From positions 6,634,001-6,698,000 of the forward strand of contig OZ260661.1 of NCBI GenBank assembly GCA_965285935.1: a stretch of 64,000 bases of DNA, in the 5' to 3' direction. This DNA comes from Ophelia neglecta. Lineage: Eukaryota. The notes below the pieces were generated by a model that saw only the letters and a program-made list of their open reading frames with translations, was not told the DNA's origin and made no database searches. The stretch's first letter is position 1, and every line of letters begins with the position of its first letter. This document shows, piece after piece, positions 1-32,332 of the stretch. Position numbers and translations under genes: made by a program.

Positions 1-1109
1 CTTTTGAACTCATTAACAAGACTGTTTGCACCTCAAGAAATGCATACCTGTCTGTGTTTAGGGGAGTGACTTATGTATCTATCATATTACAATAATACCT
101 ACCGCAATAATGTTCCCACCTTTCCCAAGTTAGTTAACACGGTATCCATCTTATATAATATACCTATCTATTTGATCCGTGGGAGTTCCCCGAGGGAGGG
201 GACCACCAAGACCTAAACCCCGACATCTTCAAACGCGTTATGAACCTACTGGCCGTGTATCCATGGTACGGAGTTCCTGAAGAGCACCCACCAGAACCTT
301 GATTCTGACGTCTGAATCACATTACAACCTACTTACCGTTTATCCATACTTGGGAGTGACTTTAGAGCGTCCACTAGGAGTCAAGGACCTTGTCCCCAAC
401 GTCTTTAAACACGCTATAATCAACTCACAATTCATCCATGTTACGGAGTTCCTAAGGGGCGTCCACCAGGACCCTGTCCCCACTTTTACAATCATTTCAT
501 AAACCTGCTATTTTTTTTATCAAACCGGGGGAGTTCCTGGAAAGCGTTCACCAGGACCTTGTCCCCGACTTCTGTTAACACGCAAAGGACCTACTTACCG
601 TTTATTCAGTCCTGAGGTTATCCTGACAAGGGTCCACGAGAACCTTTTCTCCAGCGTCTCCAAACACCTTATATCCTACTTAGTGTTTATTCAAGCACGG
701 GAAGTCCTGGAAAGCATCCAGCACGACCGTCCGAAACGTCATCCCTCTTTTTATCTACAGAACAAACCAGTCAAGTATAACTTTCGTACATCTTTTAAAC
801 TGGTCACACTTTTACACTACCATATCCATATACGTACAAAAGGATTAGTCACCATCAATCATATTATTGTATAAACAATTAAAAACCATGTTCCATCTTG
901 CTTACCGCCTTGGCATGTCAGTTAAGTCCAACACGCCGGCCTTTATCATTACTCTTTTTGTCTTACAACAGAGCCGTCTATTCTCAGAATATCGTGTTAA
1001 CCAGCCTATCATGGAAAAGATATAAGTTGTGAAAATATCAAATGTGCAAAGTCACTATTTACACTCTAACGATGTTTAATATTATCAGTCTCTAAGCGTA
1101 TAAAATATA

Positions 1110-1254
1110 CTCCCCGAATGAGTCCCTTGGTGTCCCCGAATGAGTCCCTTGGTGTCCCCGAATGTGTCCCTTGGTGTCCCCGAATGAGTCCCTTGGTGTC
1201 CCCGAATGAGTCCCTTGGTGTCCCCGAATGAGTCCCTTGGTGTCCCCGAATGAG
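1110..1254. repeat. 22-bp minisatellite (TGTCCCCGAATGAGTCCCTTGG), ~6.5 copies
   Basis: Direct tandem copies, followed by GAGTAAGGCACATGG. Confidence 0.95.
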
Positions 1255-4200
1255 TAAGGCACATGGACCGGGTCGGCCTATTCACCACTTGTATCCAGAA
1301 ATGTCCTACCATACTGGTTTTCTTGCGCAGAAGTCTATTATTTGCCTCCAGGAGCGGAGTGAGGACCTTCTGTATCCCTCGTACCCATCTACTGACCTTA
1401 TACAAGGAATGAGTAGGGCATGTGGACAGATTATTCACCGTTTTATCCATATAAGCCTTAACATCTTCCTTTTCTTACCAAGTCAAGTCATGGACTCCTC
1501 TCCAGGAGCGGAACGAGGACACTTCTGTTTCCGCCGTATTTAGCTACTCATCTAATACAAGGCTGAATACACTGCATGGTGGATTTCTGATTGAGAATTC
1601 CGTTTTAGTATTTGTGGGGTGCATAATTAAGTAATAAGTATTTGTTTTGTTCAATTAAGGGACTTTCTTATCTTCTCTTTTGTAACAAATTCAGGAAAGA
1701 ACAGCGGCTTTTATCTATTTCAATTGCGCCAGCCCTCATTTATTCAACAAACAAATCGTGTTTTACCTGGAAGTTGCCGACACCTACTTCCCTTCCCCCT
1801 CACTCGCGCCACTTCTTTACCAAAAAAAGGGAGCGAGCAGCATTCGGTTCTGTTTTTAATAAAAGAAAGGAAATGCAGTTGTTGTGAGAGCATGTTGCTT
1901 TTCATAAAAACCCTTCAATTTTGTATATAATCCAGCACCAATGAACAGACCTTCTGCATACACCACAAAATTAAGCCCCTGGCGTCCCCTGGCGCCCATG
2001 TCGGAAGGCTACTGTCGGCATGTTTTCCAGTATTATTACTTTTACCTTGGTCTCGATACATCGAAACGTGTATTTTCTTACCTAAGCCAGGTGTCACCGA
2101 TACTGTTATTGTCAAGGTATGTACGCTAAGAATGTTGTCTGCGAACCAAACGTTACATTAAAAAGGACGTCTACAGACCAGTTTTCTGAAAGTTATATAA
2201 TCTGAGCTTTTGAACACATTAACAAAACTGTATGCACCTCAAGAAATGCATACCTGTCTGTGTTTAAGGGAGTGACTTATGTATCTATCATATAACAATA
2301 AAACCCACCGCGATAATGTTCCCACCTTAGCCAGGTTAGTTAACACCGTATCCATCTTATATAATATACCTATCTATTTGATCCGTGGGAGTTCCCCGAG
2401 GGAGGGGACCACCAAGACCTAAACCCCGACATCTTCAAACGCATAATGAACCTACTGAGTGTATCCATGGTACTGAGTTCCTGAAGAGCATCCACCAGGA
2501 CCTTGACCCTGACGTCTGCAAACACATTACAACCTACCTACCGTTTAATCATACTTGGGAGTGACTTTAGAGTCTCCACTAGGAGTCAAGGACCTTGTCC
2601 CCAACGTCTTTAAACACACTATAACCAACTCACCATTCATCCATGTTACGGAGTTCCTGAAGGGCGTCCACCAGGACCTTGTCCCGACTTCTGCAATCAC
2701 TTCATGAACCTACATTCTTGTTATCAAAGCTGGGGAGTTCCTGGAAAGCGTTCACCAGGACCTTGTCCCGACTTCTGTCAACAAGCAACGGACCTACTTA
2801 CCGTTTTTTTTAGTCCTGGGGAGCTCCTGACTAGGGCCCACGAGAACCTTTTCTCCAGCGTCTCCAAACACCTTATATCCTACTTAGTGTTTATTCAAGC
2901 ACGGGAGGTCCTGGAGAGCATCCAGCACGACCTTCCGAAACGTCATCCCTCTTTTATGTACATAACAAACAGTCAAGTATAACTTTCGTACATCTTTTAA
3001 ACTGGTCACACTTGAACACTACCTTATCCATCTACGTACGAAAGTGATTTGTCACCATCCATCTAATTATTGAATGAATAATTAAAAACTATGTTCCATC
3101 TTGCTGACCGCCTTGGCATGTCAGTTAAGTCTAACACGCCTGCCTTTATCATTACTCGTTTTGTCGTACAACGGAGAAGTTTACTCTCAGAATATCGTGT
3201 CAACCAGCCTATCATGTAATAGATATAAAAAAGAATATCAAATGTGCATAATAACCATTTACACAAAAACAAGTTTTAATATTATCAATCTCTAAACGTA
3301 AAAACATACTACGTTTTTACTCTAGGGTGACCCCTGAAGCCGTCTGCCAGGACTGGGCCCCGGGTCCTTCCATATTGATATAAATATTATTACTGTTTTA
3401 GGCATTACGCCCCTGGCGCCCCCTGGCAGAAAGGTACCGTGTCCACGACTTCTTCCAACACGCAAAGGACCTAATTACCGCTTATACAGCCCTGGAAGCT
3501 TGTGGCCCGGGTCCACGAGTACCTTGTCTCCAGCGTCTCCAAATACCTTATATCCTTAATTTTATTATTGTTATAAATATACTAATTGTTTAATCCTTGG
3601 AGGCCGTCACCAGGACTTTTATCTCAAAGGTGCCTATCAGTCCTGTGAAACCTACTAACCAGGTCTCTATCTCCCGTTATCCCCTGTAGGTGTCCACCAG
3701 TCTGTGGTTTCCCGTAGTGTATGTTACCATCTGTGTAAAAGGCCTATTACATTGACACTACATTGTAAAATGAGGGTCTCTTCTCCTCTCACGACATCTT
3801 CAGAAGCTTACTTACCGTTAAAGTGACCACTGGATGCAGAATGCTACTGTCTGCATGTGTTCCGGTATTAGGCCCCTGGCGCCCCCTGGCAGAGGGCTAC
3901 TGTCTGCATGTGTTCCGGTATTAGGCCCCTGTCGCCCCCTGGCAGAGGGCTACTGTCTGCATGGGTTCCAGTATTACCCCTGCCGCCCCTGAGGGTCCCT
4001 TCTCCTCCCACGACATCGTCAGAAGCTTACTTACCATTAAAGTGTCCATTGTATAGAGAATGCTACTGTCTGCCTGTGTACCGGTATAAGCCCTTGGCGC
4101 CCCCTGGCAGAAGACTACTGTCTGCATGGGTTCCGGTATTAGGCCCTTGGCGCCCCCTGGCCGAAAGCTACTGTCTGCATGTGTTCAGGTATTATTATTC

Positions 4201-5404
4201 TTACCTTGGTCCCGATACATCGACACGTTTATTTTGTTTACCTTAGCTAAGCGTCACCAATACTGTTATTGTGCAGATCTAAACGCCGAGAATGTTGTTT
4301 TCAAACCATACGTTACAAGGACGTCTACAGACAAGTTACCTGAAAGTCATCTAATTTGAATGTTTGTACACATTATCAAGACTTTATGCAATTCTATAAA
4401 TGCATACCTGTCTGTGTTTAAGGGAGTGACTTATGTATCTAAAACCCACCGCGATAATGTTCCCACCTTTGCCAGGTTAGTTAACACGGTATCCATCTTA
4501 TATAATATACCTATCTATTTGATCCGTGGGAGTTCCCCGAGGGAGGGGACCACTAAGACCTAAACCCAGACATCTTTAAATGCGTTATGAACCTACTGAG
4601 TGTATCCATGGTACTGAGCTCCTGAAGAGCATCCACTAGGACCTTGATTCTGACGTCTGCAATCACATTACAACCTACTTACAGTTTAATTAGTCCAGTC
4701 AGTACCTTTAGAGTGTCCTCTAGAAGTCAAGGGCCTTGTCCCAAACGTCTTTAAACACACTATAACCAACTCACCATTCTTCCATGCTACGGAGTTCCTG
4801 ATGGGCGTCCACCAGGACCTTGCTCCGACTTCTGCAATCACTTCATGAACCTACATTCTTGTTATCAAAGCTGGAAAGCGTCCACTAGAACCTTGTCCCC
4901 GACTTCTTCCAACACACAAAAGACCTACTTACCGTTTATTCAGTCCTTGGGAGCTCCTGACTAGAGCCTACGAGAACCTTTTCTCTAGCGTCTCCTTATA
5001 TCCTACTTAGTGTTTATTTAAGCACCGGAGGTCCTGGAGAGCATCCAGCTCGACTGTCCAAAACGTCACCCCTCATTTTATCTACAGAACAAACCAGTCA
5101 AGTCTAACTTTCGTACCGAGTGTCAGTGACTAGAGGTTATATGAAAACGTCACTTCTCTTCGTATATATACATATGTATGTTCTTACCTTAGCCCCTACG
5201 TCACCTATACTGTTGTTATCCAGGTCTTAACCTTGGAGTATTGTCTTCATATTAATTGGTACATATACAAGGAAATCAAAAGAGCAGTTATCTGTAAGTC
5301 ATCATATTAGAGCTTACACCTGTTACACCTGACGTACTTACCTCCCATGCTATCTGGTCTGGTTAGTCAGGTATTGTACACAAGATTTCAGCGCTACTCT
5401 GTCT

Positions 5405-5537
5405 GTCTTACAGCGGAGAATACTACTCTCCTAATATCATGTCAAACTGTCTTACAGCGGAGAATACTACTCTCCTAATATCATGTCAAACTGTCTTACA
5501 GCAGAGAATACTACTCTCCTAATATCATGTCAAACTG
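5405..5537. repeat. 44-bp local tandem triplication inside an array module
   Basis: TGTCTTACAGCGGAGAATACTACTCTCCTAATATCATGTCAAAC x3; single-copy in the paralogous modules near 15155 and 17799. Confidence 0.9.
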
Positions 5538-7370
5538 CCTATCATTAAATACCCATCCGTTGAGAGAGTATCTAATGCACATGATAAGCAGTTACATAAA
5601 ATTCCTTTTCTTACCTTTATTGCTCTCCAGGAGCGGGACGAGGACCCTTCTGTGTTCTAACCTATTACAAGGTTGAAGGCACAGCGAGCGAGCTTTCTAC
5701 TTTAGAATTCCATTCTTACGGTGGTGGGGTGATATTTCATTTGTAGGGAATTGGTTTATTTTATTATTCTACTTTCTTATATTCTCCTTAGTAACAAGCT
5801 AGAATAGAATAGCGTTTTTACACAAAAGTACCAGACACATGCCTACCTCGCTCTTGCTCCTTGGTACCTCGGTGTAGGGCCTGTATCAGGGATGGATGCA
5901 TGGCCCCTGGTATATACCCAATGTAGAGCCTGTATATGTGTACAGATGTGAAGTGTCTCGCAGATTCAGGTCAGGCCAACTGTCAGTTACTACTTACACT
6001 AGGGCTGTCTTGTGCTATACTACATACCGGAGGGCTATCTCGTGTTACTCCTCAGGAGCCTCGCCAGGTACTGCTCACATCTACTGTCAGCGAGTGGGCT
6101 ATCGTCAAATATGTATAAGCTGTGGCCCTTCCCTCCAACCATTGATAGCAATTTACTCGGGTGGTGTTATCTTACCTCATATCACCGTCTTCCTCCTTAA
6201 TGGTCTCAAGACTCAAACATCAGGACACTTTAAGCAAGTCATTTACTTCAAGTGATATATGGTACATGGCTGACAGATGTTTAAGCAACAGACAGATGGA
6301 ATTGTTTGGACCATTAAGCTAGTCACAGTTCTTCACTACCATATCAATCTACGTACGAAAAGGATTTGTCATCATCCATCATATTATTGAATAAATAATT
6401 AAATACAATGTTCCATCTTGCTTACCGCCTTGGCATGTCTGTTAGTCCAACACGCCGGCCTTTATCACCACTCGTTTTGTCTTACAACAGAGAAGTTTAA
6501 TGTCAGAATATCGTGTCAACCAGCCTATCATGTAATAAATATAAAATAGAATATCCAGTGTCCATAATTACCATTAACACCAAAACCAGGTTTAATATTA
6601 TCAATCTCTAAACGTATAAAACATACTTCGTTTTTACTCTAGGGTGAGCCCTTAAGCCGTCTGCGAGGATTGTGTCCCCAGGTACTTCCATATTGATATA
6701 AATATTATTAGTGTGTTAGGCATTGCGCCCCTGGCGCCCCCTGGCAGACAGTTACTGTGTCCTCGACTTCTTCCAACACGCAAAAGACCTACTTACCGTT
6801 TATACAGCCTTGGAAGCTCGTGGCCAGGGCCCAAGAAAACCTTTTCTCCAGCGTCTCCAAATACCTTATATCCATAATTTTATTATTGTTATAAATATAC
6901 TAATTGTTTAATCCTTGGAGGCCGTCACCAGGACTTTTATCTCGAAAGTGCCTATCAGTCCTGTGAAACTTACTAACTAGGTCTCTATCTCCCGTTATCC
7001 CCTGTATGTGTCCACCAGTCTGTGGTTTCCCGTATGGTTTCTTCCCATCTGTGTAAAAGGCCAATTATCATGACACTACAATGTGAAATGATGGTCTCTT
7101 CTCCTCTCACGACATCGTCAGAATCTTACCATTATAGTGACCATTGGAGGCAGAATGCTACTGTCTGTATGTGTTCCGGTATTATTATTTTTACCTTGGT
7201 CCCGATACATCGATAAGTTTATTTTGTTTACCTAATCCATGCCTCACCAATACTGTTATTGTGCAGATCTAAACGCCGAGAATGTTTTTCTCAAACCATA
7301 CGTTACATGGACGTCTACAGACCAGTTTCCTGAAAGTCATCTAATATGAATATTTGTACACATTAACAAG

Positions 7371-9499
7371 GAGCCATAGGCAACGGTATAAGACGGCTTA
7401 GTTGCCGAGTACAGAGTTCATACTGGCTATTCTTTTTAAAGACGTAGATAAATGTGTAAAGCAATTAGAATGAACAACAAAAATGGAGACCATATTTCTA
7501 AAAGTGCGTACTTCTATTAAAGTCCCGTTAATGAGAAAGTCGCGCCTTTATAAACGCCCTAGTTCAGTTTAAAATCTTCGAAAAATACCCCTGCTAGTAA
7601 TGAAAAGAACGTTATCAGTTATGATAATTCTTTGACCGGATGACAATCACCGCAAAGCTACCATTCAGTATGTTCGAGAAAATCGCCGCTTGTACTTCTT
7701 AGGCCTTAGCATAAAAAAATAGTTTTTGTTACAAGAAAACATATACAGTTGCATTGTTCTTTTGAATTATACACCTTGTTTAGTTAGCTTAGTTTAGTTA
7801 AGTTTATTCACTGTAAACATAAAAAATACAAGTAAACTATAAAATGATATTGCACATATATATGCATGACTAAATGGCACAGGACAGACTAGACTTGTAT
7901 CACAGTGAAAAGGATAGCACCAGAAAGTCACAATAGTAACTTATTTCCATATTGGTCCCAGGGGTATGCATAACAGAAGGCACAGAAGAGTATATAAAAA
8001 AAAAAGTATTAAAATGTATTTTTTTAAAACTCCGCAGCTCTGCTGAGCCTTGAATTGGCCTCCTGCTGATTCCAAAAGTTAACCTAGAGTCTGATGCCTA
8101 ACCAACTGTACCACGGAGACCAACTACACGATCAATTTCAATACTTGTATTATCGAAGTGCCAACTCAACGAGACACGTGTTCAGAGCCCAAAATTAGCC
8201 ACACAATGGCGCAAAGACGATGCAAGCCTCACACATCAACGAGAATTCTCAGCCTCATCCTAATAGATTCATTTAAGAAATCTTATAACCAAAAACAAAA
8301 AGAGATTGTTGACGAACTTTGAAATGTTGTCACTGCTTTTAAGTATGGGTGGTATGGTTTAAACGACCGTGATCACCGCTAGGCTGCACATGAACATGGA
8401 AATACCATGGAAATACCTGCGACAGTATCGTCATCACTGACAGCACGAGAATCATGTAAATACCTGGACTACCAATACTCTTTGTTTCGACCTTCTACAT
8501 CAACAAATGGACTTACGAACATTTTGTCGTCTCCTATGTACCCTCTGTGACCTTGACCTTGCTTTCGAACAAATTGTTGACCCTGGCCCCCCTGACCTTC
8601 ACCCCAGGTCATTCGAGGTCACTACTAGGTCAAGGTCATCACTAACCCGCATGATGATCTCAAATGTCAACGCAATAATTATTAAAAGCCCCACCATTTC
8701 ATGGGTGCGCATGCGCCGAAATTGATTTCCACCCTTCTTTTAGCCCCGACCCAAAGACAAATTTTACGATCAATCCGAACTGAATTGGTTCAACAACACT
8801 GAAGTTATCGTCTAAAACATGTTTGATCACTAGGGTAGTAGTATCCGGCACTTCCGTTCATTTTAGACCCCATATTGTGTCAGACGCATTTTTCGTCTAA
8901 CAGATTCACATAACTTTACGGAGTTTCGGGACGGTTATAAACAAATTCTGTCAGATAGAGCATTTTAAATGATCCGAGGTGGGAAAAAAACCAAAACTTT
9001 GAAAAATTCCCCTGTCCTTGACCTTTGACCCAAAATTTTGAAACTTGCGTAAGATTCTTCTAAGTTCAATGTCAGAACGTGGCTTAAATTTCACAACGCT
9101 ACCACTTAAAATAAAAAAGTGCTTTTTTCCATAATTATCAAAATGTTTGGAACGCTCCAGCGCAAAAAATAACATATCTAGACCCGATCGGTCTGCGACA
9201 GAATTGTTGTCTATGACGTCATGAAAATTTTTGCGCAAACCAGAATATCCGTAGACATTTCATATCCCGACTTATATGATATTTTTTATACATGTGAAAA
9301 AAGTAGGTTTTTTTTATTTCTCTACGCACATCCGGGTCCAATTTTTACCATTTTCGAACTTAACCGGGCCACGCAAATCCCGCGAGTGTCCAGAAGTTTG
9401 AAGGCTCTAGCTCAATTATTACTGCCATTTAGGATGGGGACGACAAGAAATTTGCCAAAATTCATATCTAGGTCAAATACCGATCACAGTATAAGACGG
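7371..9499 (+). mobile_element. Non-autonomous Helentron-associated (HINE-like) element inserted in the array, probably 3'-truncated
   Basis: Interrupts the array motif CACATTAACAAG|ACTGTATGCAA. Begins after AACAAG with a GGCAAC..GTTGCC hairpin. GTATAAGACGG appears at both ends (7386-7396, 9489-9499). Contains internal TTGACCTTTGACC motifs typical of such elements. Confidence 0.55.
7778..7970 (-). mobile_element. Possible LINE (L2/Crack-like) 3'-end fragment nested in the HINE-like element
   Basis: Minus strand shows an AATAAA signal followed by a (CTAAA)n-like tail, preceded by a GGAAATAAG...CTTTCTGGTGCTATCC 3'-UTR-like motif. Confidence 0.3.
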
Positions 9500-10252
9500 A
9501 AGACTGTATGCAAGTCTAGAAATGCATACCTGTCTGTGTTTAAGGGAGTGACTTATGTATCTATCATATTACAATAATACCCACAGCGATAATGTTCCCA
9601 CCTTTGCCAACTTAGTTAACACGGTATCCATCTTATATAATATACCTATCTATTTGATCTGTGGGAGTTCCCCGAGGGAGGGGACCACCAAGACCTAAAC
9701 CCCGACATCTTCAAACGCATTATGAACCTACTGACCGTGTATCCAGGTACTGAGCTCCTGAAGAGCATCCACCAGGGGCGTTCGCCAGGACCTTGTCCCC
9801 ACTTTTACAATCATTTCATAAACCTGCTTTTTTTATCAAACCTGGGGAGTTCCTGGAAAGCGTTCACCAGGACCTTGTCCCCGACTTCTGTCAACACACA
9901 AAGGACCTACTTACCGTTTATTCAGCCCTGGGGAGCTCCTGACTAGGGCCTACGAGAACCTTTTCTTCAGCGTCTCCAAACACCTTATATCCTTCTTAGT
10001 GTTTATTCAAGCACGGGAGGTCCTAGCGAGCATCGAGCACGACCTCCTTGGCATGTCAGTTAAGTCCAACACGCCTGCCTTTATCATCACACGTTTTGTC
10101 TTACAAAAGAGCTGTCTATTCTCAGAATAACGTGTCAACCAGCCTATTATGGCAAAGATATAAGTTGTGTCAGTATCAATTGTGCTGTACATAATCACCA
10201 TTTACACTCAAACGATGTTTAATATTATCAGTCTCTAAACGTATAAAATATA

Positions 10253-10397
10253 CTCCCCGAAAGAGTCCCTTGGTGTACCCGAATAAGTCCATTGGTGTCC
10301 CCGAATGAGTCCCTTGGTGTCCCCGAATGAGTCCCGTTGGGTCCCCGAATGAGTCCCTTGGTCTCCCCGAATGAGTCCCTTGGTCTCCCCGAATGAG
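10253..10397. repeat. 22-bp minisatellite, ~6.5 copies
   Basis: Same unit and same right flank as 1110-1254. Confidence 0.95.
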
Positions 10398-12516: not shown

Positions 12517-12816
12517 TTCCAACACGCAAAAGACCTACTTACCGTTTATACAGCCTTGGATGCTCGTGGCCAGGGCCCAAGAAAACCTTTTCTCCAGCGT
12601 CTCCAAATACCTTATATCCTTAATTTTATTATTGTTATAAATATACTAATTGTTTAATCCTTGGAGTTCCAACACGCAAAAGACCTACTTACCGTTTATA
12701 CAGCCTTGGATGCTCGTGGCCAGGGCCCAAGAAAACCTTTTCTCCAGCGTCTCCAAATACCTTATATCCTTAATTTTATTATTGTTATAAATATACTAAT
12801 TGTTTAATCCTTGGAG
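12517..12816. repeat. 150-bp direct tandem duplication
   Basis: TTCCAACACGCAAAAGACC...AATCCTTGGAG starts at 12517 and again at 12667. Confidence 0.9.
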
Positions 12817-17900: not shown

Positions 17901-20900
17901 ACATAAAATTCCTTTTCTTACCTTTATTGCTCTCCAGGTGCGGGACGAGGACCCTTCTGTGTTCTGGCCTATTACAAGTTACATTACTTGTATCCATAAA
18001 TGTCCTTCCATCCTGGTTTTTTTGCGCAGAAGTCTTTTATTTGCCTCCAGGAGTGGAGTGAGGACCCTTCTGTATTCCCCGTACCCATCTACTGACCTAA
18101 TACAAGCAAGGGGTAGGGCATGTGGACAGATTATTCAGCCGTTTTATCCATATAAGCCCTAACATCTTCTTTTTCTTACCAAGCCAAGTCATTCACTTCT
18201 CTCCAGGAGCGGAACGAGGACACTTCTGTTTTCGCCGTACTTAGCTACTCATCTTATACAAGGCTGAATACACTGCAAGGTTAACTTATGACTGAGAATT
18301 CCTTTTTAATGTTTGTTGGGTACATTAATTAATAAGAATTGGTTTTGTTCAATTTAGGGACTTTCTTACATTCTCTTTTGTAATTAATTCAGGAAAGAAC
18401 AGCGGCTTTTATTTATTTCAATTGCGCCAGCCCTCATTTATTCATCACACCGATCGGGTTCTACCTGGAAGTTGCCGACACCTACTTCCCTTCCCCCTCA
18501 CTCGCGCCACTTCTTTACCATAAAAAGTGAACGAGCAGCATTCGGTTCTGTTTTCAATAAAAGAAATAAAAATTTGTTGTTGTGGAAGCTTGTTGCTTGT
18601 CATACAGATCCTTCAATTTTGTATTTAATCCAGCACCAATGAACAGACCTGCGTACAGCACAAATTAACCCCTGGCGTCCCCTGGCGCCCCTGGCGTCCT
18701 CTGGCGCCCCCTGACGTCCCCTGGCGTCCCCTGTCGCCTGGCGCCCATGTTGGAAGGCTACTGCCGGCATGTTTTCCGATATTATCACTTTTACCTTGGT
18801 CCCGGTACATCGAAACGTATATTTTCTTACCTAAGCCATGTGTCACCGAGACTGTTATTGTCCAGGTATATAGGCTAAGATTGTGGTCAGCGAACCAAAC
18901 GTTACATTAAAAAGGACGCCTACGGACCAGTTATCAGAAAGTCATATAATCTGAGCTTTGGAACTCATTAACAAGACTGTATGCAACTCTAGAAATGCAT
19001 ACCTGTCTGTGTCTAAGGGAGTGACTTATGTATCTATCATATTACAATAATACCCACCGCGATAATGTTCCCACCTTTCCCAAGTTAGTTAACAAGGTAT
19101 CCATCTTATATAATATACCTATCTATTTGATCCGTTGGAGTTCCCCGAGGGAGGGGACCGCAAAGTCCTAAACCTCGACATCTTCAAACGCGATTTGAAC
19201 CTACTGACCGTGTATCCATGGTACTGAGCTCCTGAAGAGCATCCACCAGGACCTTGACGCTGACGTCTGCAAACACATTACAACCTACTTACTGTTTATT
19301 CATACTTGGGAGTGACTTTAGGGTCTCCACTAGGAGTCAAGGACCTTGTCGCAAAACATCTTTAAACACACTATAACCAACTCACCATTCATCCATGTAC
19401 GGAGTTCCAGAAGGGCGTCCACCAGGACCTTGTCCCGACTTCTGCAATCACTTCATGAACCGACTTACTTTTTATCCAAGCTGGGGAGTTCCTGGAAAGC
19501 GTCCACTTGGACCTTTTCCCCGACTTCTTCCAACACGCAAAGGACCTACTTACCATTTATTCAGTTCTGGGCAGCTCCTGACCAGGCCCACGAGATTTAC
19601 GAACATCCATCATATTATTGAATAAATAATTAAATACCCAAGTTCGACCTTACTTACCTCCTTGGCATGTCTCTTAGGTCTAATGCGCCTCCCTTCCCCG
19701 CTAGTCGTTTTTTCTTACAACAGAGAACTTTATTGTCAGAATATCGTGTCAACCAGCCTATCATGTAATAAATATAAAATAGAATATCCAGTGTGCATAA
19801 TTACCATTAACACCAAAACCAGGTTTAATATTAATTATCTCTAAACGTATAAAATATACCTCGTTTTTACTCTAGGGTGAGCCCTGAAGCCGTCTGCCAG
19901 GACTGTGTCCCCAGATACTTCCATATTGATATAAATATTATTAGTGTGTTAGGCATTACGCCCCTGGCGCCCCCTGGCAGACAGTTACTGTGTCCTCGAC
20001 TTCTTCCAACACGCAAAAGACCTACTTACCGTTTATACAGCCTTGGAAGCTTGTGGCCAGGGCCCAAGAAAACCTTTGCTCCAGCGTCACCAAACACCTT
20101 ATATCCTTAATTTTATTATTGTTATAAATATACTAATTGTTTAATCCTTGGAGGCCGTCACCAGGACTTTTATCTCGAAGGTGCCTATCAGTCATGTGAA
20201 ACCTACTAACCAGGTCTCTATCTCCCGTTATCCCCTGTAGGTGGCCACCAGTCTGTGGTTTCCCGTATGGTTTCTTCCCATCTGTGTAAAAGGCCAATTA
20301 TCATGACACTACAATGTGAAATGAGGGTCCCTTCTCCTCTCACGACATCGTCAGAAGCTTACTTACCATTATAGTGATCATTGGATGCAGAATGCTACTG
20401 TCTGCAGGTGTTCCGGTATTAGGCCCCTGGCGCCACCTGGCAGAGGGCTACTTTCTGCATGGGTTCCAGTATTACCCCTGCCGCCCCTGAGGGTCCCTTC
20501 TCCTCCCACGACATCGTCAGAAGCTTACTTACCATTAAAGTGCCCATTGTATAGAGAATGCTACTGTCTGCCTGTGTTCCGGTATTAGGCCCCTGGCGCC
20601 CCCTGGCAGAAGGCTACTGTCTGCATGGGTTCCGGTATAAGGCCCCTGGCGCCCCCTTGCAGAAGGCTACTGTCTGCATGTGTTCCGGCATTAGGCCCCT
20701 GCCGCCCCCTGGCAGAATGCTACTGTCTGCCCGTGTTCCGGTATTATTATTCTTACCTTGGTCCCGATACATCAACACGTTTATTTTGTTTACCTTAGCC
20801 AAGCGTCACCAATACTTTTATTGTGCAGATCTAAACGCCGAGAACGTTGTTTTCAAACCATACGTTACAAGGACGTCTACAGACCAGTTACCTGAAAGTC

Positions 20901-22518: not shown

Positions 22519-22978
22519 TGCATTTGCCTGCTACCATATTTAAATTTAGAGACACAAAATTTACCAATCAGGATGAAATAATTCATCAGCGATGTGTCAT
22601 TACTACATGTAATACCCATAATAACATTCTTTTCTGAAATTTGGTGAACCAAATTGCTAAATTTTTGCATATCCGCTAACACCAAGTCCCATACTATTTT
22701 AATTGAGTCACAGTTGAACAAGAAGTTTTCAATAGTATCCAGCTCAGAGCAGATGCTACAGTTCCTAGTTGTTCTTACACCCATCTTGAATAATAAGATA
22801 TTTGTCGGGTAGATATGCATTAAAACTCTCCAATGAAGCTCAATTAATCTAGCCTCCCCTCTACAAGCACGGGCAGCGATAAGAAAAGTTTCTTCACATG
22901 TAGCCACTTCCCCATATTTGATAAACCAGTATTTTGGTAGGAGTACACGTTAGCTTTAAAATTTCCCCTTTGATTAGT
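22519..22978 (-). mobile_element. L1/Tx1-like LINE ORF2 C-terminal fragment (zf-RVT-like region)
   Basis: Encodes LHWRVLMHIYPTNILLFKMG..CSIC..DTIENFLFNC..W..ILIGKFCVSKFKY; no TSD seen. Confidence 0.7.
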
Positions 22979-23487
22979 TAGCAAGTTATCTACTCCAAGT
23001 GATATATGGTACATGGCTGAGAGATGTTTAAGCAACAGACAGATGGAATTGTTCGGATCATTAAACTAGTCACAGTTTTACACTACCATATCCATCTACG
23101 TACGAAAAGGATTTGTCATCATCGATCATATTATTGAGTAAATAATTAAATACCAAAATTCGATCTTACTTTCCTCCTGCTAAGTCTAACACGCCGGCCT
23201 TTATCACTACTCGTTTTGTCTTACAACAGAGAAGTTTAATGTCAGAATATCATGTCAACCATCCTATCATGTAATAGATATAAGGTGAGAGAATATCCAA
23301 TATGCATAATTACCATTAACACAAAAACGAGGTTTAATATTATCAATCTCTAAACGTATAAAACATACTTCGGTTTTACTCTAGGGTGAGCCCTGAAGCC
23401 GTCTGCCAGGATTGTGTCCCCAGGTCCTTCTATATTGATATAAATAATCTTACTGTTGTATCCAGGGAGGCTGTAGCCAGGACCTTA

Positions 23488-23723
23488 TCCCTTGGTGTCC
23501 CCGAATGAGTCCCTTGTGTCCCCGAATGAGTCCCTTGGTGTCCCCGAATGCTTGGTCTCCCCGAATGAGTCGTTTGGTGTCCCCGAATGAGTCCCTTGGT
23601 GTCCCCGAATGAGTCCCTTGGTGTCCCCGAATGAGTCCCTTGGTGTCCCCGAAGGAGTCCCTTGGTGTCCCGAATGAGTCCCTTGGTGTCCCCGAATGAG
23701 TCCCTTGGTGTCCCCGGATGAGT
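23488..23723. repeat. 22-bp minisatellite, ~11 copies
   Basis: Same unit; a few copies carry deletions. Confidence 0.95.
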
Positions 23724-24570: not shown

Positions 24571-25194
24571 CTATCTGCCCCACCATACCGAAATCATTTC
24601 GACAGCCTCTTGCCTCGCGGAGGGACGACTTGATCATTTCTCGTCTGCGCATCGGCCACTCACATTTTACACACACTCATCTTCTGAGAAGAGAGGACCC
24701 ACCTTTTTGTGAGGGCTGCCAATGCCAGATTACCATCCAACACATTCTGTTGGAATGTAGCGATTTCGCCGAGGCTAGGTAACATTTTTATAACGTTAAC
24801 AGCCTCAAAACCTTATTTGACAAGATCTGCCCACAGCAGCTCCTTAATTTCTTTAAATCTATATATCTCTACTACAAAATGTAGTAGACCTAAAACGTGG
24901 AAACCAATTTTAATGTGCGAAAGTTTATGGAACTTTCATTTATCTATTTATTGAACAACTAACCTTTTACCTTCCTTTACTAACACATTTTAGTCAGAAA
25001 AACATCTGACCCATCCACCTAGAATTTTTTGTAAAATAGAGCTCAATAACCGCTTACTTCTTACTATTATCCCCATGTAAATAAAAATAGACAGTACAAT
25101 AAACGATTAACTATACCCAACTTAAGACACTAAATGACCCACATGGTGTCTATGTGTCGTTAAGCCCCAAAAATCCAAAAATCCAAATCCCAAT
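24571..25194 (+). mobile_element. 5'-truncated I-clade/Nimb-like LINE, second independent insertion
   Basis: Same family as 14354-14905 with a longer 5' end (PTIPKSFRQPLASRRDDLIISRLRIGH) and a premature stop. 13-bp TSD CCTAAGCCATGTG at 24558-24570 and 25195-25207. Confidence 0.85.
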
Positions 25195-28009
25195 CCTAAG
25201 CCATGTGTCACCGAGACTGTTATTGTCCAGGTATATGCGCTAAGAATGTGGTCAGCGAACCAAACGTTACAGTAAAAGATCAGTTATCAAAAAGTCATAT
25301 AATCTGAGCTTTTGAACTCATTAACAAGACTGTATGCACCTCAAGAAATGCATACCTGTCTGTGTTTAAGGGAGTGACTTATGTATCTATCCTATTTCAA
25401 TAATACCCACCGCGATAATAATCCCACCTTTCCCAAGTTAGTTAACCTGGTATCCATTTTATATAATATACCTATCTATTTAATCCGTGGGAGTTCCCCG
25501 AGGGAGGGGACCACCAAGACCTAAACCATGACATCTTCAAACGCGTTATGAACCTACTGACCGTGTATCCATGGTACGGAGTTCCTGAAGAGCATCCACC
25601 AGGACCTTGACCCTTACGTCTGCAAACACATTACAACCTACTTACTGTTTATTCATACTTGGGAGTGACCTAGGGCGCCCCCTGGCAGAAAGTTACTGTG
25701 TCCTCGACTTCTTCCAACACGCAAAGGACCTACTTACCGTTTATTCAGCCCTGGAAGCTCGTGGCCAGGGCCCATGAAAACCTTTTCTCCAGCGTCTCCA
25801 AACACCTTAAATCCTTAATTTTTATTATTGTTATAAATATACTAATTGTTTTATCCTTGGAGGCCTTCACCAGGACTTTTTTTCTCAAAGGTGCCCATCA
25901 GTCCTGTGAAACCTACTAACCAGGTCTCTATCTCCCGTTATCCCCTGTAGGTGTCCACCAGTCTGTGGTTTCCCTTATTATTTCTTCCCATATGTGTAAA
26001 AGGCCAATTATCATGACACTACATTGTAAAACGAGGGTGCCTTCTCCTCTCACGACATCGTCAGAAGCTTACTTACCATTAAAGTGCCCATTGTATGAAG
26101 AATGCTACTGTCTGCCTGTTTTCCGGTATTAGGCCCCTGGCGCCCCCTGGCAGAAGGCTACTGTATGTCTGTGTTCCAGTATTAGGCCCCTGGCGCCCCC
26201 TGGCAGAAGGCTACTGTCTGCATGTGTTCCGGTATTATTATTCTTACCTTGGTCCCGATACATCGACACGTGTATTATTTTACCTTAGCCAAGCGTCACA
26301 AATACTTTTATTGTGCAGATATAAACACCGAGAATGTTGCCTTCAAACCATACGTTACAAGGACGTCTACAGACCAGTTACCTGAAAGTCATCTAATTTG
26401 AATGTTTGTACACATTATCAAGACTTTATGCAATTCTAGAAATGCATACCTGTCTGTGTTTAAGGGAGTGACTTATGTATCTATCATATTACAATAAAAC
26501 CCACCGTGATAATGTTCCCACCTTTGCCAGGTTAGTTAACACGGTATCCATCTTATATAATATACCTATCTATTTGATCCGTGGGAGTTCCCCGAGGGAG
26601 GGGACCACCTAGACCTAAACCCCGACATCTTCAAACGCGTTATGAACCTACTGACCGTGTATCCATGGTACGGAGGTCCTGAAGAGCATCCACCAGGACC
26701 TTGACCCTTACGTCTGCAAACACATTACAACCTACTTACTGTTTATTCATACTTGGGAGTGACTTTAGAGTCTCCACTAGGAGTCAAGGACCTTGTCGCA
26801 AAACATCTTTAAACACACTATAATCAAATCACCATTCATCCTTGTACGGAGTTCCTGAAGGGCGTCCACCAGGACCTTGTCCCGACTTCTGCAAGCACTT
26901 CATGAACCGACTTACTTTTTATCCAAGCTGGGGAGTTCCTGGAAAGCGTCCACTTGGACCTTGTCCCCGACTTCTTCCAACACGCAAAGGACCTACTTAC
27001 CGTCTATTCAGTTCTGGGCAGCTCCTGACCAGGCCCACGAGATTTACGAACATCCATCATATTATTGGATAAATAATTAAATGCCCAAGTTCGACCTTAC
27101 TTACCTCCTTGGCATGTCTCTTAGGTCCAATGTGCCTCCCTTCCCCGCTAGTCGTTTTGTCTTACAACAGGGAAGTTTACTCTCAGAATATCGTGTCAAC
27201 CAGCCTATCATGTAATAGATATAAAATAGAATATCCAATGTCCATAATTACCACTTACACATAAATGAGCTTTAATATTATTTATCTCTAAACGTATAAA
27301 ATATACCTCGTTTTTACTCTAGGGTGACCCCATAAGCGGTCTGCCAGGATTGTGTCCCCAAGTCCATCTATATTGATATAAATATTATTACTGCTTTAGG
27401 CATTACGCCCCTGGAGCCCCCTGGCAGTAATTTACTGTGTCCTCGACTTCTTCCAACACGCAAAGGACCTTCTTACCGTTTATACAGCCCTGGAAGCTCG
27501 TGGCCAGGGCCCACGAAAACCTTTTCTCCAGCGTCTCCAAACATCTTATATCCTTAATTTTATTATTGTTATAAATATACTAATTGTTTTATCCTTGGAG
27601 GCCGTCACCAGGACTTTTATCTCGAAAGGTACCCATCAGTCCTGTGAAACATTGTAAAATGAGGGTCCCTTCTATCATGACATCCTCAGAAGCTTACTTA
27701 CCATTATAGTGACCATTGGAGGCAGAATGCTACTGTCTGTCTGTGTTCCGGTATTAGGCCCCTGTCGCCCCCCTGGCCGAAAGCTACTGTCTGCATGTGT
27801 TCGGGTATTATTATTCTTACCTTGGTCCCGAAACATCGACACGTTTATTATTTTACCTTAGCCATGCCTCACCAATACTTTTATCGTGCAGATATAAACA
27901 CCGAGAATGTTGCCTTCAAACCATACGTTACAAGGACGTCTACAGACCAGTTTCCTGAAAGTCATCTAAATGAATTTTTGTACACATTAACAAGACTGTA
28001 TGCAGATCT

Positions 28010-28480
28010 TGCATTTGCCTGCTACCATATTTAAATTTAGAGACACAAAGTTTACCAATCGGGATCAAATAATTTATCAGCGATGTGTCATTACTACATG
28101 TAATACCAATAATAACATTCTTTTCTGAAATTTGGTGAACCAAATTGCTAAATTTTTGCATATCCGCTAACACCAAGTCCCATACTATTTTAATTGAATC
28201 ACAATTGAAAAAGAAGTGTTCAATAGTAACCAGCTCGGAGCAGGTGCTACAGTTCCTGGTTGTTCTTACACCCATCTTGAATAATGAGATATTTGTCGGG
28301 TAGATATGCATTAAAATTTACCAATGAAGCTCAATTAATCTAGCCTCCCCTCTACAAGCACGGGCAGCGATAAGAAAAGTTTCTTCACAGGTAGCCACTT
28401 CCCCATATTTGATAAACCAGTATTTTGGTAGGAGTACACCAGGTTCAGTGGTTAGCTTTAAAATTTCCCCTTTGATTAGT
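28010..28480 (-). mobile_element. Duplicate of the L1/Tx1-like fragment at 22519-22978
   Basis: Near-identical sequence with the same flanks, offset ~5490 bp. Confidence 0.7.
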
Positions 28481-29040
28481 TAGCAAGTTATCTACTCCAA
28501 GAGATATATGGTACATGGCTGAGAGATGTTTAAACAACGTACAGATGGAATTGTTCGGATCATAAAACTAGTCACAGTTTTACACTACCATATCCATCTA
28601 CGTACGAAAAGGATTTGTCATCATCGATCATATTATTGAATAAATAATTAAATACCAAAATTCGATCTTACTTACCTCCTGCTAAGTCTAACACGCCGGC
28701 CTTTATCACCACTCGTTTTGTCTTACAACAGAGAAGTTTAATGTCAGAATATCGTGTCAACCAGCCTATCATGTAATAGATATAAAATAGAATATCCAAT
28801 GTGCATAATTACCATTAACACAAAAACGAGGTTTAATATTAATTATCTCTAAACGTATAAAACATACTTCGGTTTTACTCTAGGGTGAGCCCTGAAGCCG
28901 TCTGCCAGGACTGTGTCCCCAGGTCCTTCCTAATTGATATAAATAATCTTACTGTTGTATCCAGGGAGGCTGTAGCCAGGACCTTATCCCAACGTCCACA
29001 ATCTTGTTATAAACAGAACCAACCAGCTTAACCTCCGTAC

Positions 29041-29533
29041 TGAGTCTCTGTCCCTTGCTGTCCCCGAATGAGTCCCTTGGTGTCCCCGAATGAGTTCCTT
29101 GGTTTCCCCGAATGAGTCCCTTGGGGTCCCCGAATGAGTCGCTTGGTGTCCCCGAATGACTCCCTTGGTGTCCCCGAATGAGTCCCTTGGTGTCCCCGAA
29201 TGACTCCCTTGGTGTCCCCGAATGAGTCCCTTGGTGTCCCCGAATGAGTTCCTTGGTTTCCCCGAATGAGTCCCTTGGTGTCCCCGAATGAGTCGCTTGG
29301 TGTCCCCGAATGACTCCCTTGGTGTCCCCGAATGAGTCCCTTGGTGTCCCCGAATGAATCCTTGGTGTCCCCGAATGAGTCCCTTGGTGTCACCGAATGA
29401 GTCCCTTGGTGTCCCCGAATGAGTCCCTTGGTGTCCCCGAATGAGTCCCTTGGTATCCTCGAATGAGTCCCTTGGTATTCCCGAATGAGTCCCTTGGTGT
29501 CGCCGAATGAGTCCCTTGGTCTCCCCGAATGAG
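29041..29533. repeat. 22-bp minisatellite, ~22 copies
   Basis: Same unit with a degenerate left edge. Confidence 0.95.
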
Positions 29534-30256
29534 TAAGGCACATGGACCGGGTCGGATTATTCACCACTTGTATCCATAAATGTCCTTCCATACTGGTTTT
29601 CTTGCGCAGAAGTCTTTTATTTGCCTCCAGGAGTGGAGTGAGGACCCTTCTGTATTCCCCGTACGCATCTACTGACCTATTACAAGGAAGGGGTAGGGCA
29701 TGTGGACATATTATTCAGCCGTTTTATCCATATAAGCCCTAACATCTTCCTTTTCTTACCAAGCCAAGTCATGGACTCCTCTCCAGGAGCGGAACGAGGA
29801 CACTTCTGTTTTCGCCGTACTTAGCTACTCTTCTCATACAAGGCTGAATACACTGTTAGCTAGATTTCTGATTGAGAATTCCGTTTGAAAGTTTTTGGGG
29901 TGCATTATTTATTAATAAGAATTTGTTTTTTTTTTCAATTTAAGGACTTTCTAATATTCTCTTATGAATTCAGAAAAGAACAGGGGCTTTTATTTATTTC
30001 AATTGCACCTGCCCTAATTGATTCAACACATAAATCGTGTTTTACCCGGAAGTTCCTGAAATCTACTTCACTTCCCCCTTATTCGCTCCACTTTTTTTAC
30101 CATTAAAGTGAACGAGCAGCATTCGGTTCTGTTATCAGTAAAAGAAAGGAAATGTAGTTGTTGTGGGAGCTTGTTGCTTGTCATAAAGATCCTTCAATTT
30201 TTTATTTAATCCAGCACCAATGAACAGACCTTCTGCATACACAACAATTTTTAAAC

Positions 30257-30337
30257 CCTGGCGCCCCCTGGCGCCCCCTGGCGCCCCCTGGCGCCCCCTG
30301 GCGCCCCCTGGCGCCCCCTGGCGCCCCCTGGCGCCCA
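30257..30337. repeat. 10-bp repeat (GGCGCCCCCT)n, ~8 copies
   Basis: Expansion of a motif found in 1-2 copies throughout the array; a degenerate run also lies at ~18670-18746. Confidence 0.9.
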
Positions 30338-32332
30338 TTTCGGAAGGCTTCTGCCGGCATGTTTTCCGGTATTATCACTTTTACCTTGGTCCCGATACAT
30401 CGACACGAGTATTTTCTCACCTAAGCCATGTGTCACCGAGACTGTTATTGTCCAGGTATATACGCTAAGATTGTGGTCAGCGAACCAAACGTTACATTAA
30501 AAAGGACGTCTACAGACCAGTTATCAGAAAGTCATATAATCTGAGCTTTTAAACACATTAACAAAACTGTATGCACCTCAAGAAATGCATACTTGTCTGT
30601 GTTTAAGGGAGTGACTTATGTATCTATCATATAACAATAATACCCACCGCGATAATGTTCCCACCTTTTCCAAGTGAGTTAACATGGTATCCATCTTATA
30701 TAATATACCTATCTATTTTATCCGTGGGAGTTCCCCGAGGGAGGGGACCACCAAGACCTAAACCCAGACATCTTCAAACGCGTTATGAACCTACTGAGTG
30801 TATCCATGGTACTGAGCTCCTGAAGAGCATCCACCAGGACCTTGACCCTGACGTCTGCAAACACATAACAACCTACTTACCGTTGATCCATACTTGGGAG
30901 TGACTTAAGAGTGTCCACCAGGAGTCAAGGACCTTGTCCGCAACGTCTTCAAACACATTATAACCAACCCCACCATTCATCCATGCTACGGAGTTCCTGA
31001 AGGGCGTCCACCAGGACCTTGTCCCGATTTCCTAAACCTACTTACTTTTTATCCAAGCTGGGGAGTTCCTGGAAAGCGTCCATCAGGACCTTGTCCCCGA
31101 CTTCTTCCAATACACAAAGGACCTACTTACCGTTTATTCATTCCTGGGGAGCTCCTGACCAGGGCCTACGAGAACCTTTCCTCCAGCGTCTCCAAACACC
31201 TTATATCCTACTTAGTGTTTATTTAAGCACGGAAGGTCCTGGAGAGCATCCAGCACGACCTTCCGAAACGTCATCCCTCTTTTTATCTACAGAACAAACC
31301 AGTCAAGTATAACCTTCGTACATCTTTTTAAACTGGTCACACTTCTACACTACAATATCCATCTAAGTACGAAAGGGATTTGTCACCATTCATCATATTA
31401 TTGAATACATAATTATAACCATCTTGCTTACCGCCTTGGTTTGTCAGTTAAGTCCAACACGCCTGCCTTTATCATTACTCGTTTTGTCTTACAACAAAGA
31501 AGTTAATCTGTATAAGCGTGGTGCTTCCCTCAAACCCTTGATAGTATTATACTTTGGTGGTATTACCTACCTCATATAAGTGTCTTCAACCAAGTCTTAC
31601 AACAGAGCCGTCTATTCTCAGAATATCGTGTCAACCAGCCTATTATGTAATAAATATAACACTCAAACGATGTTTAATATTATCAGTCTCTAAATATATA
31701 AAACATACTACGGTTTATATGGGATTGTGATGTCCCACCGCCTTCCTAGCCGCCAAGACCTACTTACCATGATGACCCCAGGGTGACCCCTGAGTGCGTC
31801 TGCCAGTGCCTTGTCGCCGACGTCTTCCTTCTTGCTATAACCATGCTTGCCGTTTTGACGCCATGGTGACCCCTGAGGCGTTCTGTAAGACCTTGAGACA
31901 GGCATCTTTCATCTTGTTACACTTACTGTTTCCATCCTTGGAAGGCCTCCACCCGGACCTTGACCCTAACCCGGACCTTGACCCTAACCCGGACCTTAAC
32001 CCTAACCAAGACCTTGACGTCTTCAATCTGGTTATAAAACTTTCTACATAGCATACACACTGAGCCTCTTTCACGCCCCACTGAGTCCACCGGTCCCTCG
32101 TTTCTCATTTTGTTTTGTTTTTCACTCTGTGGATTACTATAAATTATTTCGAACTGATTTACATTTATAGAACATGTAGTTGATCTTATTTCTCTTGATG
32201 ACAACCCTGGGATATTTAAAGCAATTCAATGCATGTATTTTGATCACTGGATTTTATTTGTTTGTTGGGTGCCCTTTCCATGCACGGGAAGAGCCAAGGT
32301 GCTGAGGACGATAGCCTACCTTAATCAACAGA

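What the first reader, a model, noticed from the sequence alone, without database searches (positions are those of the whole stretch)
1..32060. A >32-kb macrosatellite built from a fossil ribonuclease-inhibitor-type LRR gene
Seen: most array modules, read on the minus strand, give pieces of a 28-29-aa RI-type LRR, and the core sub-repeat is ~84 bp (28 codons). Examples: ILQG*DLDNNSIGDVGAKV (5185-5241), RRLDLHNNSIGDA (4250-4288), RIYLDNNSIGDT (~11240-11275), LNKH*VGYKVFGDAGEKVLV, LEEVGDKVLVDAFQELPSLDK, LHTVLLMCTNIQIR*LSGN, YNKIVDVG (28988-29011). The ORF track misses this because of stops and frameshifts. Established: this LRR subtype occurs in NLR receptors, RNase inhibitor and RanGAP-like proteins. 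Inference: an intronless multi-LRR sequence died and was then amplified and shuffled at least 11-fold. It could be inert, a small-RNA source targeting intact LRR genes, or a donor bank of LRR cassettes loosely analogous to lamprey VLR cassettes. Lesions shared across copies favour amplification after gene death.
Basis: partly seen in the sequence, partly recalled or inferred. Interest (0 to 1): 0.85.

Follow-up and report, generated by a model that had tools for sequence, protein, structure and literature searches.

The report
Non-coding macrosatellite with LRR-like 84-bp core
A 53-kb, single-locus tandem array in a probable annelid genome carries blocks of an 84-bp sub-repeat that weakly resembles a leucine-rich-repeat coding unit, but it encodes nothing today, has no parent or target gene in the genome, and looks like an ordinary complex satellite.

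Summary
The array is real and larger than reported. It is an all-direct mosaic repeat of about 53 kb (window -21,500 to 31,600; genome C1:6,612,500-6,665,600). The basic unit is about 2.2 kb, with 5.5-kb and 11-kb higher-order duplications.

The 84-bp sub-repeat is also real: 157 units in about 24 blocks. It covers only about 20% of the array, so "most modules" is an overstatement.

On the minus strand the unit consensus reads *VGYNVFEDVGDKVLVDALQELPSMNKR. Four related tests against a profile I built from real RI-type LRRs give P of about 0.01, with that frame the best of six.

Every standard search is negative: Pfam, a PDB profile search, phmmer against 1.84 billion proteins, and the ESM Atlas.

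The recurrent "stop" sits inside a GGTAAGT splice-donor-like motif at the same position in most unit types. Unit spacing is 82-94 bp, so the frame breaks at nearly every unit. One unit, already non-coding, was therefore amplified; this is not a multi-LRR gene.

No parent or target sequence exists elsewhere in the genome, apart from an 830-bp fragment at 327 kb. No RNA data are available.

Verdict: a non-coding macrosatellite. LRR ancestry is about even odds and the proposed functional roles are unsupported. Earlier scan notes read part of this same stretch in another window and described exon-end/splice-donor minisatellites elsewhere in this genome.

The parts
1..31600 (-). Window part of a roughly 53-kb all-direct mosaic macrosatellite. 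The full array is genome C1:~6,612,500-6,665,600, which is window -21,500 to 31,600.
   Evidence: Self-BLAST and extension into upstream loci L026-L030. Short-read contig depth is 5-50x that of the single-copy flank.
30718..31286 (-). Block of 7 tandem 84-bp units. This is one of 12 large blocks in the window. The others are 26577-26997, 25479-25815, 21087-21507, 19130-19550, 17025-17467, 13697-14244, 11531-11996, 9657-10045, 4522-5081, 2381-2952 and 175-754.
   Evidence: nhmmer with a unit model, E of 1e-10 to 1e-22 per unit.
31777..31970 (-). Three degenerate edge units at the right end of the array (the 5' end on the minus strand).
   Evidence: nhmmer E of 1e-7 to 0.05; sequence read.
27434..27554 (-). 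Mini-block of about 1.5 units. Paralogues lie at 21944-22064, 19986-20107, 12500-12770, 6753-6873 and 3435-3556.
5185..5271 (-). LDLDNNSIGDVGAK module, ending in AAG|GTAAGA, with a TAA at the L4 position. It has a paralogue at about 17580-17665. More degenerate paralogues sit near 2107, 4267, 11256, 13429, 18856, 25221 and 30446.
   Evidence: Scores are 10.5-16.5 bits with my LRR profile; the best flank score is 15.4 bits.
29050..29534 (.). 22-bp microsatellite component of the unit. Also at 1111-1255, 10254-10398 and 23488-23723.
   Evidence: Tandem Repeats Finder
20387..20746 (.). 53-bp minisatellite component. Also at 3836-4194, 13218-13357, 16791-16918 and 26099-26237.
22519..22979 (-). 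LINE 3' fragment (zf-RVT) carried inside the 5.5-kb duplication. Its copy lies at about 28010-28480.
   Evidence: Pfam zf-RVT E=3.3e-5. This is the only part of the 5.5-kb unit with dispersed copies on other chromosomes.
7185..9500 (+). Insertion of dispersed repeats (about 590 first-look candidates genome-wide). It was duplicated with the array and has a 96% copy 11,007 bp upstream.

Best explanation
This is a non-coding, single-locus complex macrosatellite that grew in stages by unequal exchange or segmental duplication. Stage 1 (inferred): one unit of about 84 bp expanded into a short minisatellite of 5-7 units, and the units then diverged to roughly 55-80% identity. That founding unit already carried GGTAAGT, whose TAA reads as an in-frame stop. 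Stage 2 (shown by the repeat structure): a mosaic unit of about 2.2 kb was amplified about 20-fold. It holds the 84-bp block, the 22-bp, 53-bp and 10-bp simple repeats, and an LDxNNSIGD|GTAAG module. Stage 3 (shown): duplications of 5.5 kb and 11 kb carried along LINE and other repeat insertions. Nothing in the array is translatable now, and nothing else in the genome resembles it enough to be a parent, a conversion partner or a small-RNA target. The founding 84-bp unit may derive from an RI-type LRR coding segment; I put this at about 50%. If it does, the likeliest source is an exon end plus its splice donor, the 'mirage' kind of minisatellite that earlier notes report as common in this genome.
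For: All repeats are direct, with offsets of 2.2, 5.5 and about 11 kb at 83-97% identity. There are 157 units in about 24 blocks. Stops occur in every frame; the unit's first codon is a stop in 57/114 units, and other types carry stops at other fixed columns. Spacing is 82-94 bp and exactly 84 in only 32/123 cases. GT is at the junction in 91/114 units and GTRAGT in 51/114. There are no Pfam, Rfam or tRNA hits on either strand, apart from the LINE zf-RVT fragment. Similar sequence is found only at this locus plus one 830-bp fragment. Flanks are TE-rich and show no obvious gene. Read-contig depth supports a multicopy array. For LRR ancestry: P of about 0.01, the LRR frame best of six, and the predicted register recovered.
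Against: No RNA data exist for this organism, so transcription, splicing and small-RNA output are untested. The order of the stages is inferred from identity levels, not dated. The LRR tests use one home-made profile and are not independent of each other. They were also run on a hypothesis suggested by these same data.
Confidence: 0.72

Rival explanations
1. One reading: an intronless gene encoding many RI-type LRRs died, and its different LRRs survive as the different 84-bp units, later amplified and shuffled.
For: The period is 28 codons. The consensus has N9, F/I11, D13, G15, L19 and A22-L23 in RI-type register. P is about 0.01. Variability by codon position runs pos3 > pos1 > pos2 in that frame (P=0.07), and the synonymous fraction is 35% against 20% and 29% in the other frames.
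Against: Most unit types share GT at one junction position, and six of the ten the GT(A/G)AGT/stop motif, which points to descent from one already broken unit. The LxxLxL strand motif is missing from the units. There are no Pfam, PDB or phmmer matches and no parent gene. The LDxNNSIGD modules end at splice-donor-like AG|GTRAG, which argues against 'intronless'.
Confidence: 0.15
2. The LRR look is coincidence. An ordinary minisatellite of non-genic or TE origin happens to have an 84-bp period and a V/L/D/G-rich reading.
For: All database searches are negative. The consensus scores only 8.6 bits, against 12-40 bits for real repeats. Flank DNA reaches 15-16 bits by chance. The hypothesis was generated from the same sequence used to test it.
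Against: Four tests give P of about 0.01, with the predicted frame and register. The period is exactly 28 codons. A second module, LDLDNNSIGDVGAK, is also LRR-like on the same strand.
Confidence: 0.42
3. The array is a working locus: either a small-RNA source against LRR genes or a donor bank of LRR cassettes for gene conversion.
For: None directly. The array is strand-asymmetric and sits in a TE-rich region.
Against: No other locus shares the 20-mer core at up to 2 mismatches beyond chance (one hit against three control hits). Nor does any share the 681-bp block, the 5.5-kb unit or the protein profile. The cassettes are all broken.
Confidence: 0.04
4. A live giant multi-exon LRR gene in which each 2.2-kb unit contributes an exon.
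For: Acceptor-like and donor-like sites flank some LRR-like pieces, for example a 113-nt GT...AG interval after the module at 17,580-17,632.
Against: Candidate exons carry stops in most copies. Units are heterogeneous mosaics with TE insertions. The 'exons' are not more conserved than their flanks.
Confidence: 0.02

Closest known systems
Macrosatellites with kb-scale units and higher-order repeat structure (my own knowledge: human D4Z4, RS447, DXZ4; alpha-satellite HORs as reviewed in PMC8122249)
   Same: Head-to-tail kb-scale units at one locus, nested smaller repeats, higher-order duplications, and TE insertions copied along with the units.
   Different: D4Z4 and RS447 units keep an ORF (DUX4, USP17). 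Here every frame is broken, and no copy-number or chromatin data exist.
'Mirage' minisatellites: tandem duplications spanning an exon-intron boundary (amphioxus Adh3 and globins, PMC3087553). Earlier scan notes s1-733622 and s1-736047 report them elsewhere in this genome.
   Same: The unit consensus contains a perfect G|GTAAGT next to a coding-like stretch. Unit length (84 bp) lies within the reported 10-160 bp range.
   Different: Mirages sit in an intron next to the authentic exon of an expressed gene. Here no gene is found, and the block itself is part of a 2.2-kb unit repeated about 20 times.
RI-type (ribonuclease-inhibitor-like) leucine-rich repeats, Pfam LRR_6 PF13516
   Same: 28-residue period, with N, F/I, D, G, L and AL at the expected positions of the consensus unit.
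   Different: No Pfam-level match, no LxxLxL strand motif in the units, no open frame, and no relative among 1.84 billion representative proteins.
Lamprey VLR donor cassettes and Drosophila Su(Ste)/Stellate (my own knowledge)
   Same: Arrays of gene-derived fragments near or far from a target.
   Different: Both need sequence identity with a recipient or target gene. None exists here.

Membership tests
RI-type LRR (PF13516 LRR_6) | Repeat period of 28-29 residues | tested here: met
   Consensus unit is 84 bp; offset 84 is enriched; the modal spacing is 84 bp but only 32/123 spacings are exact.
RI-type LRR (PF13516 LRR_6) | LxxLxLxxN/CxL strand segment followed by GDxGaxxLaxaL | tested here: inconclusive
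   N9, F/I11, D13, G15, L19 and A22-L23 are present. L4 and L6 are absent in the units (R and V, with a stop between them). The full motif appears only in the LDLDNNSIGDVGAK module.
RI-type LRR (PF13516 LRR_6) | Match to the curated profile at its threshold | tested here: not met
   No Pfam family at E<=10 for 10 stop-free pieces and 16 stop-free units. The genome-wide PF13516 scan reported no match in the array. My own profile gives 8.6 bits for the consensus, P of about 0.01.
RI-type LRR (PF13516 LRR_6) | Continuous open reading frame over several repeats | tested here: not met
   The longest LRR-frame stretch is 50 aa (14095-14244). There are stops or frameshifts at nearly every unit.
Macrosatellite / higher-order tandem array | Head-to-tail kb-scale units at a single locus | tested here: met
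   All repeats are direct. About 53 kb lies at one locus, and elsewhere only one 830-bp fragment is found.
Macrosatellite / higher-order tandem array | Copy-number polymorphism between individuals | not testable with these tools
   Only one sample's runs hold the sequence.
Mirage (exon-end/splice-site minisatellite) | Repeat unit contains a splice-site consensus beside exon-derived sequence | tested here: met
   The consensus has G|GTAAGT. GT is in 91/114 units and GTRAGT in 51/114. Whether the adjoining sequence derives from an exon is inferred only.
Mirage (exon-end/splice-site minisatellite) | Array abuts the authentic exon of an expressed gene | tested here: not met
   No intact exon or gene was found in the array or within about 30 kb on either side. 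Expression could not be tested.
VLR-like donor cassette bank / Su(Ste)-like small-RNA array | Sequence identity with a recipient or target gene elsewhere | tested here: not met
VLR-like donor cassette bank / Su(Ste)-like small-RNA array | Small RNAs or somatic rearrangement | not testable with these tools
   No RNA runs exist; the DNA runs come from one sample.

The most novel reading that the evidence does not exclude
A satellite born from coding sequence: the 84-bp core is the relic of one RI-type LRR exon end plus its splice donor. It first grew into a 'mirage' minisatellite and then, after the host gene was lost, was carried into a 53-kb macrosatellite. That would link exon-boundary minisatellites to the birth of large satellites.
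Probability: 0.3. Interest if true: 0.45.

Novelty: new member of a known kind. Interest (0 to 1): 0.28.

Why it matters
As it stands this is a well-resolved example of a complex, locus-specific macrosatellite in a lophotrochozoan genome. It is useful for repeat annotation and as a warning that periodic non-coding DNA can mimic a protein repeat. If the LRR/exon-end origin were confirmed in a related species, it would document a route from a splice-junction minisatellite to a large satellite. The more exciting ideas, a cassette donor bank or a small-RNA source against LRR genes, have no sequence partner in this genome.

Tried and rejected
- Strict LRR regular expressions on six frames found nothing in the array.
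- tblastn of two real LRR proteins from this genome against the array found nothing significant.
- hmmsearch on whole-frame translations failed for technical reasons, and an over-sharp profile gave only negative scores. I replaced these with softened profiles.
- phmmer of the 50-aa stop-free piece against 1.84 billion proteins returned one hit, P0072. It is a bacterial MerR-domain repeat protein whose score is a sum of one weak match repeated 11 times, so I rejected it as spurious.
- The ESM Atlas gave no recognition.
- A PDB profile search gave E=0.11 at best (Slit2, cysteine desulfurase) and no RI-type protein.
- Plus-strand ORFs are longer only because that strand is C/T-rich, and they have no Pfam family.
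- Rfam and tRNA scans were empty.
- The sequencing-run search found no RNA library.
- A permuted LRR profile ranks the LDLDNNSIGDVGAK module first of about 228,000 positions, but only 1 bit above the best flank hit, so it is not decisive.
- Literature searches for an LRR-derived macrosatellite found nothing relevant.
- No structure prediction or complex prediction was run, because no stop-free piece is longer than 55 aa.
Full report
**Context.** The window is G000:C1:6,634,001-6,698,000 of a 762-Mb eukaryotic assembly. The closest named relatives of a CARD-LRR protein from this genome are annelid proteins (Paralvinella, Owenia, Lamellibrachia), so the organism is probably an annelid. The window contains no N.

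**Is the array real?**
- Self-comparison shows that window 1-31,600 consists of direct repeats at 83-95% identity, with none inverted.
- A 50-aa piece of the array, used as a protein query on the whole genome, matched only C1:6,613,693-6,665,286.
- After I fetched 50 kb upstream, a 5.5-kb array segment covered window -21,500 to 31,600. The array is therefore about 53 kb, not 32 kb.
- Recurrent offsets are about 2.2 kb, 5.5 kb (20,608-23,491 against 26,099-28,990, 95%) and about 11 kb.
- Short contigs from the only sample holding this sequence cover the array at 5-50 times the depth of the adjacent single-copy flank. One 590-bp contig reaches from the unique flank into the degenerate edge units at the array's right end, without any difference. 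The array is therefore not an assembly artefact.

**The 84-bp sub-repeat.**
- Offset 84 ranks third of 399 offsets for base matching, and the signal is localised in blocks.
- An iterated nhmmer model finds 157 units. They form 19-20 blocks of 4-7 contiguous units and about 11 mini-blocks of 1.5 units.
- These units cover 20% of the array.
- The remaining 80% consists of a 22-bp microsatellite, 53-bp and 10-bp minisatellites, TE fragments and other sequence with no clear LRR-like reading. "Most modules" is therefore too strong.

**What the units read like.**
- The 84-bp consensus translates on the minus strand to *VGYNVFEDVGDKVLVDALQELPSMNKR; the other two frames also carry stops.
- Clustering gives ten unit types, all variants of this one pattern.
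- The first codon is a stop in 57 of 114 aligned units (TAA 43, TGA 13, TAG 1). Other types carry a stop at a different fixed column, for example column 13 in 18 units.
- Spacing between unit starts is 82-86 or 92-94 bp, and exactly 84 in only 32 of 123 cases. The frame therefore breaks at almost every unit, as the three-frame translations show.
- The recurrent "stop" lies inside GGTAAGT. GT is at that position in 91 of 114 units, and GTAAGT or GTGAGT in 51.
- These lesions are shared by all copies of a given unit type, so the kb-scale amplification copied DNA that was already non-coding.

**Is the LRR resemblance more than chance?** I collected 71 RI-type LRR proteins (NLRs, RanGAPs, LRRC31 and CARD-LRR proteins) and two LRR-containing ORFs from this genome. 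I extracted 555 repeats and built a 26-position profile with consensus LRELDLSGNSIGDEGAEALAEALKKN, then softened it. Results:

| Test | Result |
|---|---|
| Consensus unit score | 8.6 bits, best in the predicted frame and register |
| Shuffled units | P=0.010 |
| Random genomic 84-mers | P=0.018 |
| Permuting codon columns of nine unit types (keeps composition) | P=0.0099; LRR frame 0.8 bits against -7 to -16 for the other five frames |
| hhalign of unit types against real repeats | P=0.012, against 0.27-0.71 for the other frames |

- The best single unit scores 17.5 bits. Real repeats typically score above 12 bits, and flank DNA reaches 14-16 bits by chance.
- Among unit types, variability runs pos3 > pos1 > pos2 in the LRR frame (P=0.07). 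The synonymous share of single-difference codons is 35%, against 20% and 29% in the other frames.
- A separate module reads LVYVPINMKTILQG*DLDNNSIGDVGAK and ends at AAG|GTAAGA. Its stop sits at a leucine position. It ranks first of about 228,000 positions with a permuted profile, but only about 1 bit above the best flank hit.

These tests share one profile, and they test a hypothesis suggested by the same sequence. I take them as suggestive only.

**Standard searches are all negative.**
- No Pfam family at E<=10 for ten stop-free pieces or for 16 stop-free units.
- A profile of 17 stop-free units (alignment A1) against all PDB sequences gives E=0.11 at best, and no RI-type protein.
- Exhaustive phmmer of the 50-aa piece against 1.84 billion representatives gives one spurious bacterial repeat protein.
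- The ESM Atlas does not recognise the piece.
- Plus-strand ORFs, the longest minus-strand ORFs, Rfam and tRNA scans give nothing.

**Parent gene, conversion partner or target.** Four genome-wide searches find only this locus:

| Query | Result outside the array |
|---|---|
| A1 protein profile | the 327-kb fragment; two chance-level hits at E>4 |
| 681-bp block | the 327-kb fragment only |
| 5.5-kb higher-order unit | dispersed copies of its LINE fragment; the 327-kb fragment |
| Conserved 20-mer core, up to 2 mismatches | 1 hit, against 42 in the array and 3 for the reversed control |

The one real exception is an 830-bp fragment at C1:327,424-328,256. Small RNAs could not be tested because no RNA run exists.

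**Surroundings.**
- The right flank holds a G-rich 32-bp minisatellite (32,917-33,900), a full-length LINE (45,265-50,679) and a transposase-like ORF.
- The left flank has only low-complexity ORFs. No host gene is visible.

**Interpretation.**
- The data fit a staged growth of non-coding DNA. One unit of about 84 bp, already carrying GGTAAGT/TAA, became a short minisatellite. A 2.2-kb mosaic containing it was amplified about 20-fold. Later duplications of 5.5 kb and 11 kb copied TE insertions along with it.
- Earlier notes of this scan (s1-733622, s1-736047) report that tandem copies of exon end plus splice donor are common in this genome. The literature calls these 'mirages' (PMC3087553).
- The coding-like 76 bases next to a perfect donor consensus would fit such a seed taken from an LRR exon. 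I checked only that the donor motif is present. No adjoining authentic exon was found.
- I put LRR ancestry of the unit at about one half, split between a single exon-end seed (about 0.3-0.35) and the multi-LRR fossil (about 0.15). Chance resemblance is about 0.4-0.45.
- A live gene or a working small-RNA or donor locus is unlikely (a few percent).

**Verdict.** This is a new member of a known kind, a complex macrosatellite, and interest is low to moderate.

Noticed in passing
L031 4924-5756 (G000:C1:327,424-328,256): This is the only copy of array sequence outside the locus: an 830-bp piece at 83-92% identity. It sits inside the reverse-transcriptase ORF of a LINE, between KSLRD and YRPISLL, and is flanked by a roughly 10-bp direct repeat, GAGATT(T)ATA, with no poly-A. 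Its two modules are in the opposite order to the array. That pattern would fit reinsertion of a circular or permuted array fragment.
   Followed up: partly
window 14354-14907 and 24639-25189 (+ strand): Two copies of a LINE 3' fragment (92% alike) sit at the paralogous LDxNNSIGD|GTAAG module in two different unit variants. I only confirmed the positions from the self-alignment.
   Followed up: partly
window 7185-9500: An insertion of dispersed repeats. It includes a 1,065-bp element with about 590 first-look candidates genome-wide; the scored copies are 94-97% identical to it. A 96% copy lies 11,007 bp upstream in the array, so the insertion predates an 11-kb duplication.
   Followed up: yes
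window 32917-33900: A G-rich 32-bp minisatellite (30 copies, with a 227-bp higher order) lies about 1 kb beyond the array's right end. It has open frames of 130-225 aa on both strands and no Pfam match for the one tested.
   Followed up: partly
window 45265-50679 (-): An apparently full-length non-LTR retrotransposon: ORF2 of 1,187 aa with endonuclease and RT motifs, preceded by ORFs of 390 and 217 aa.
   Followed up: no
window 57094-58026 (+): A 310-aa ORF resembling the C-terminal part of a MULE/transposase-like protein. This is judged by eye only.
   Followed up: no
window 1-32000: Strong and uniform strand asymmetry across the whole array. GC skew is -0.10 to -0.22 on the plus strand, flipping to +0.41 in the adjacent minisatellite.
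   Followed up: no
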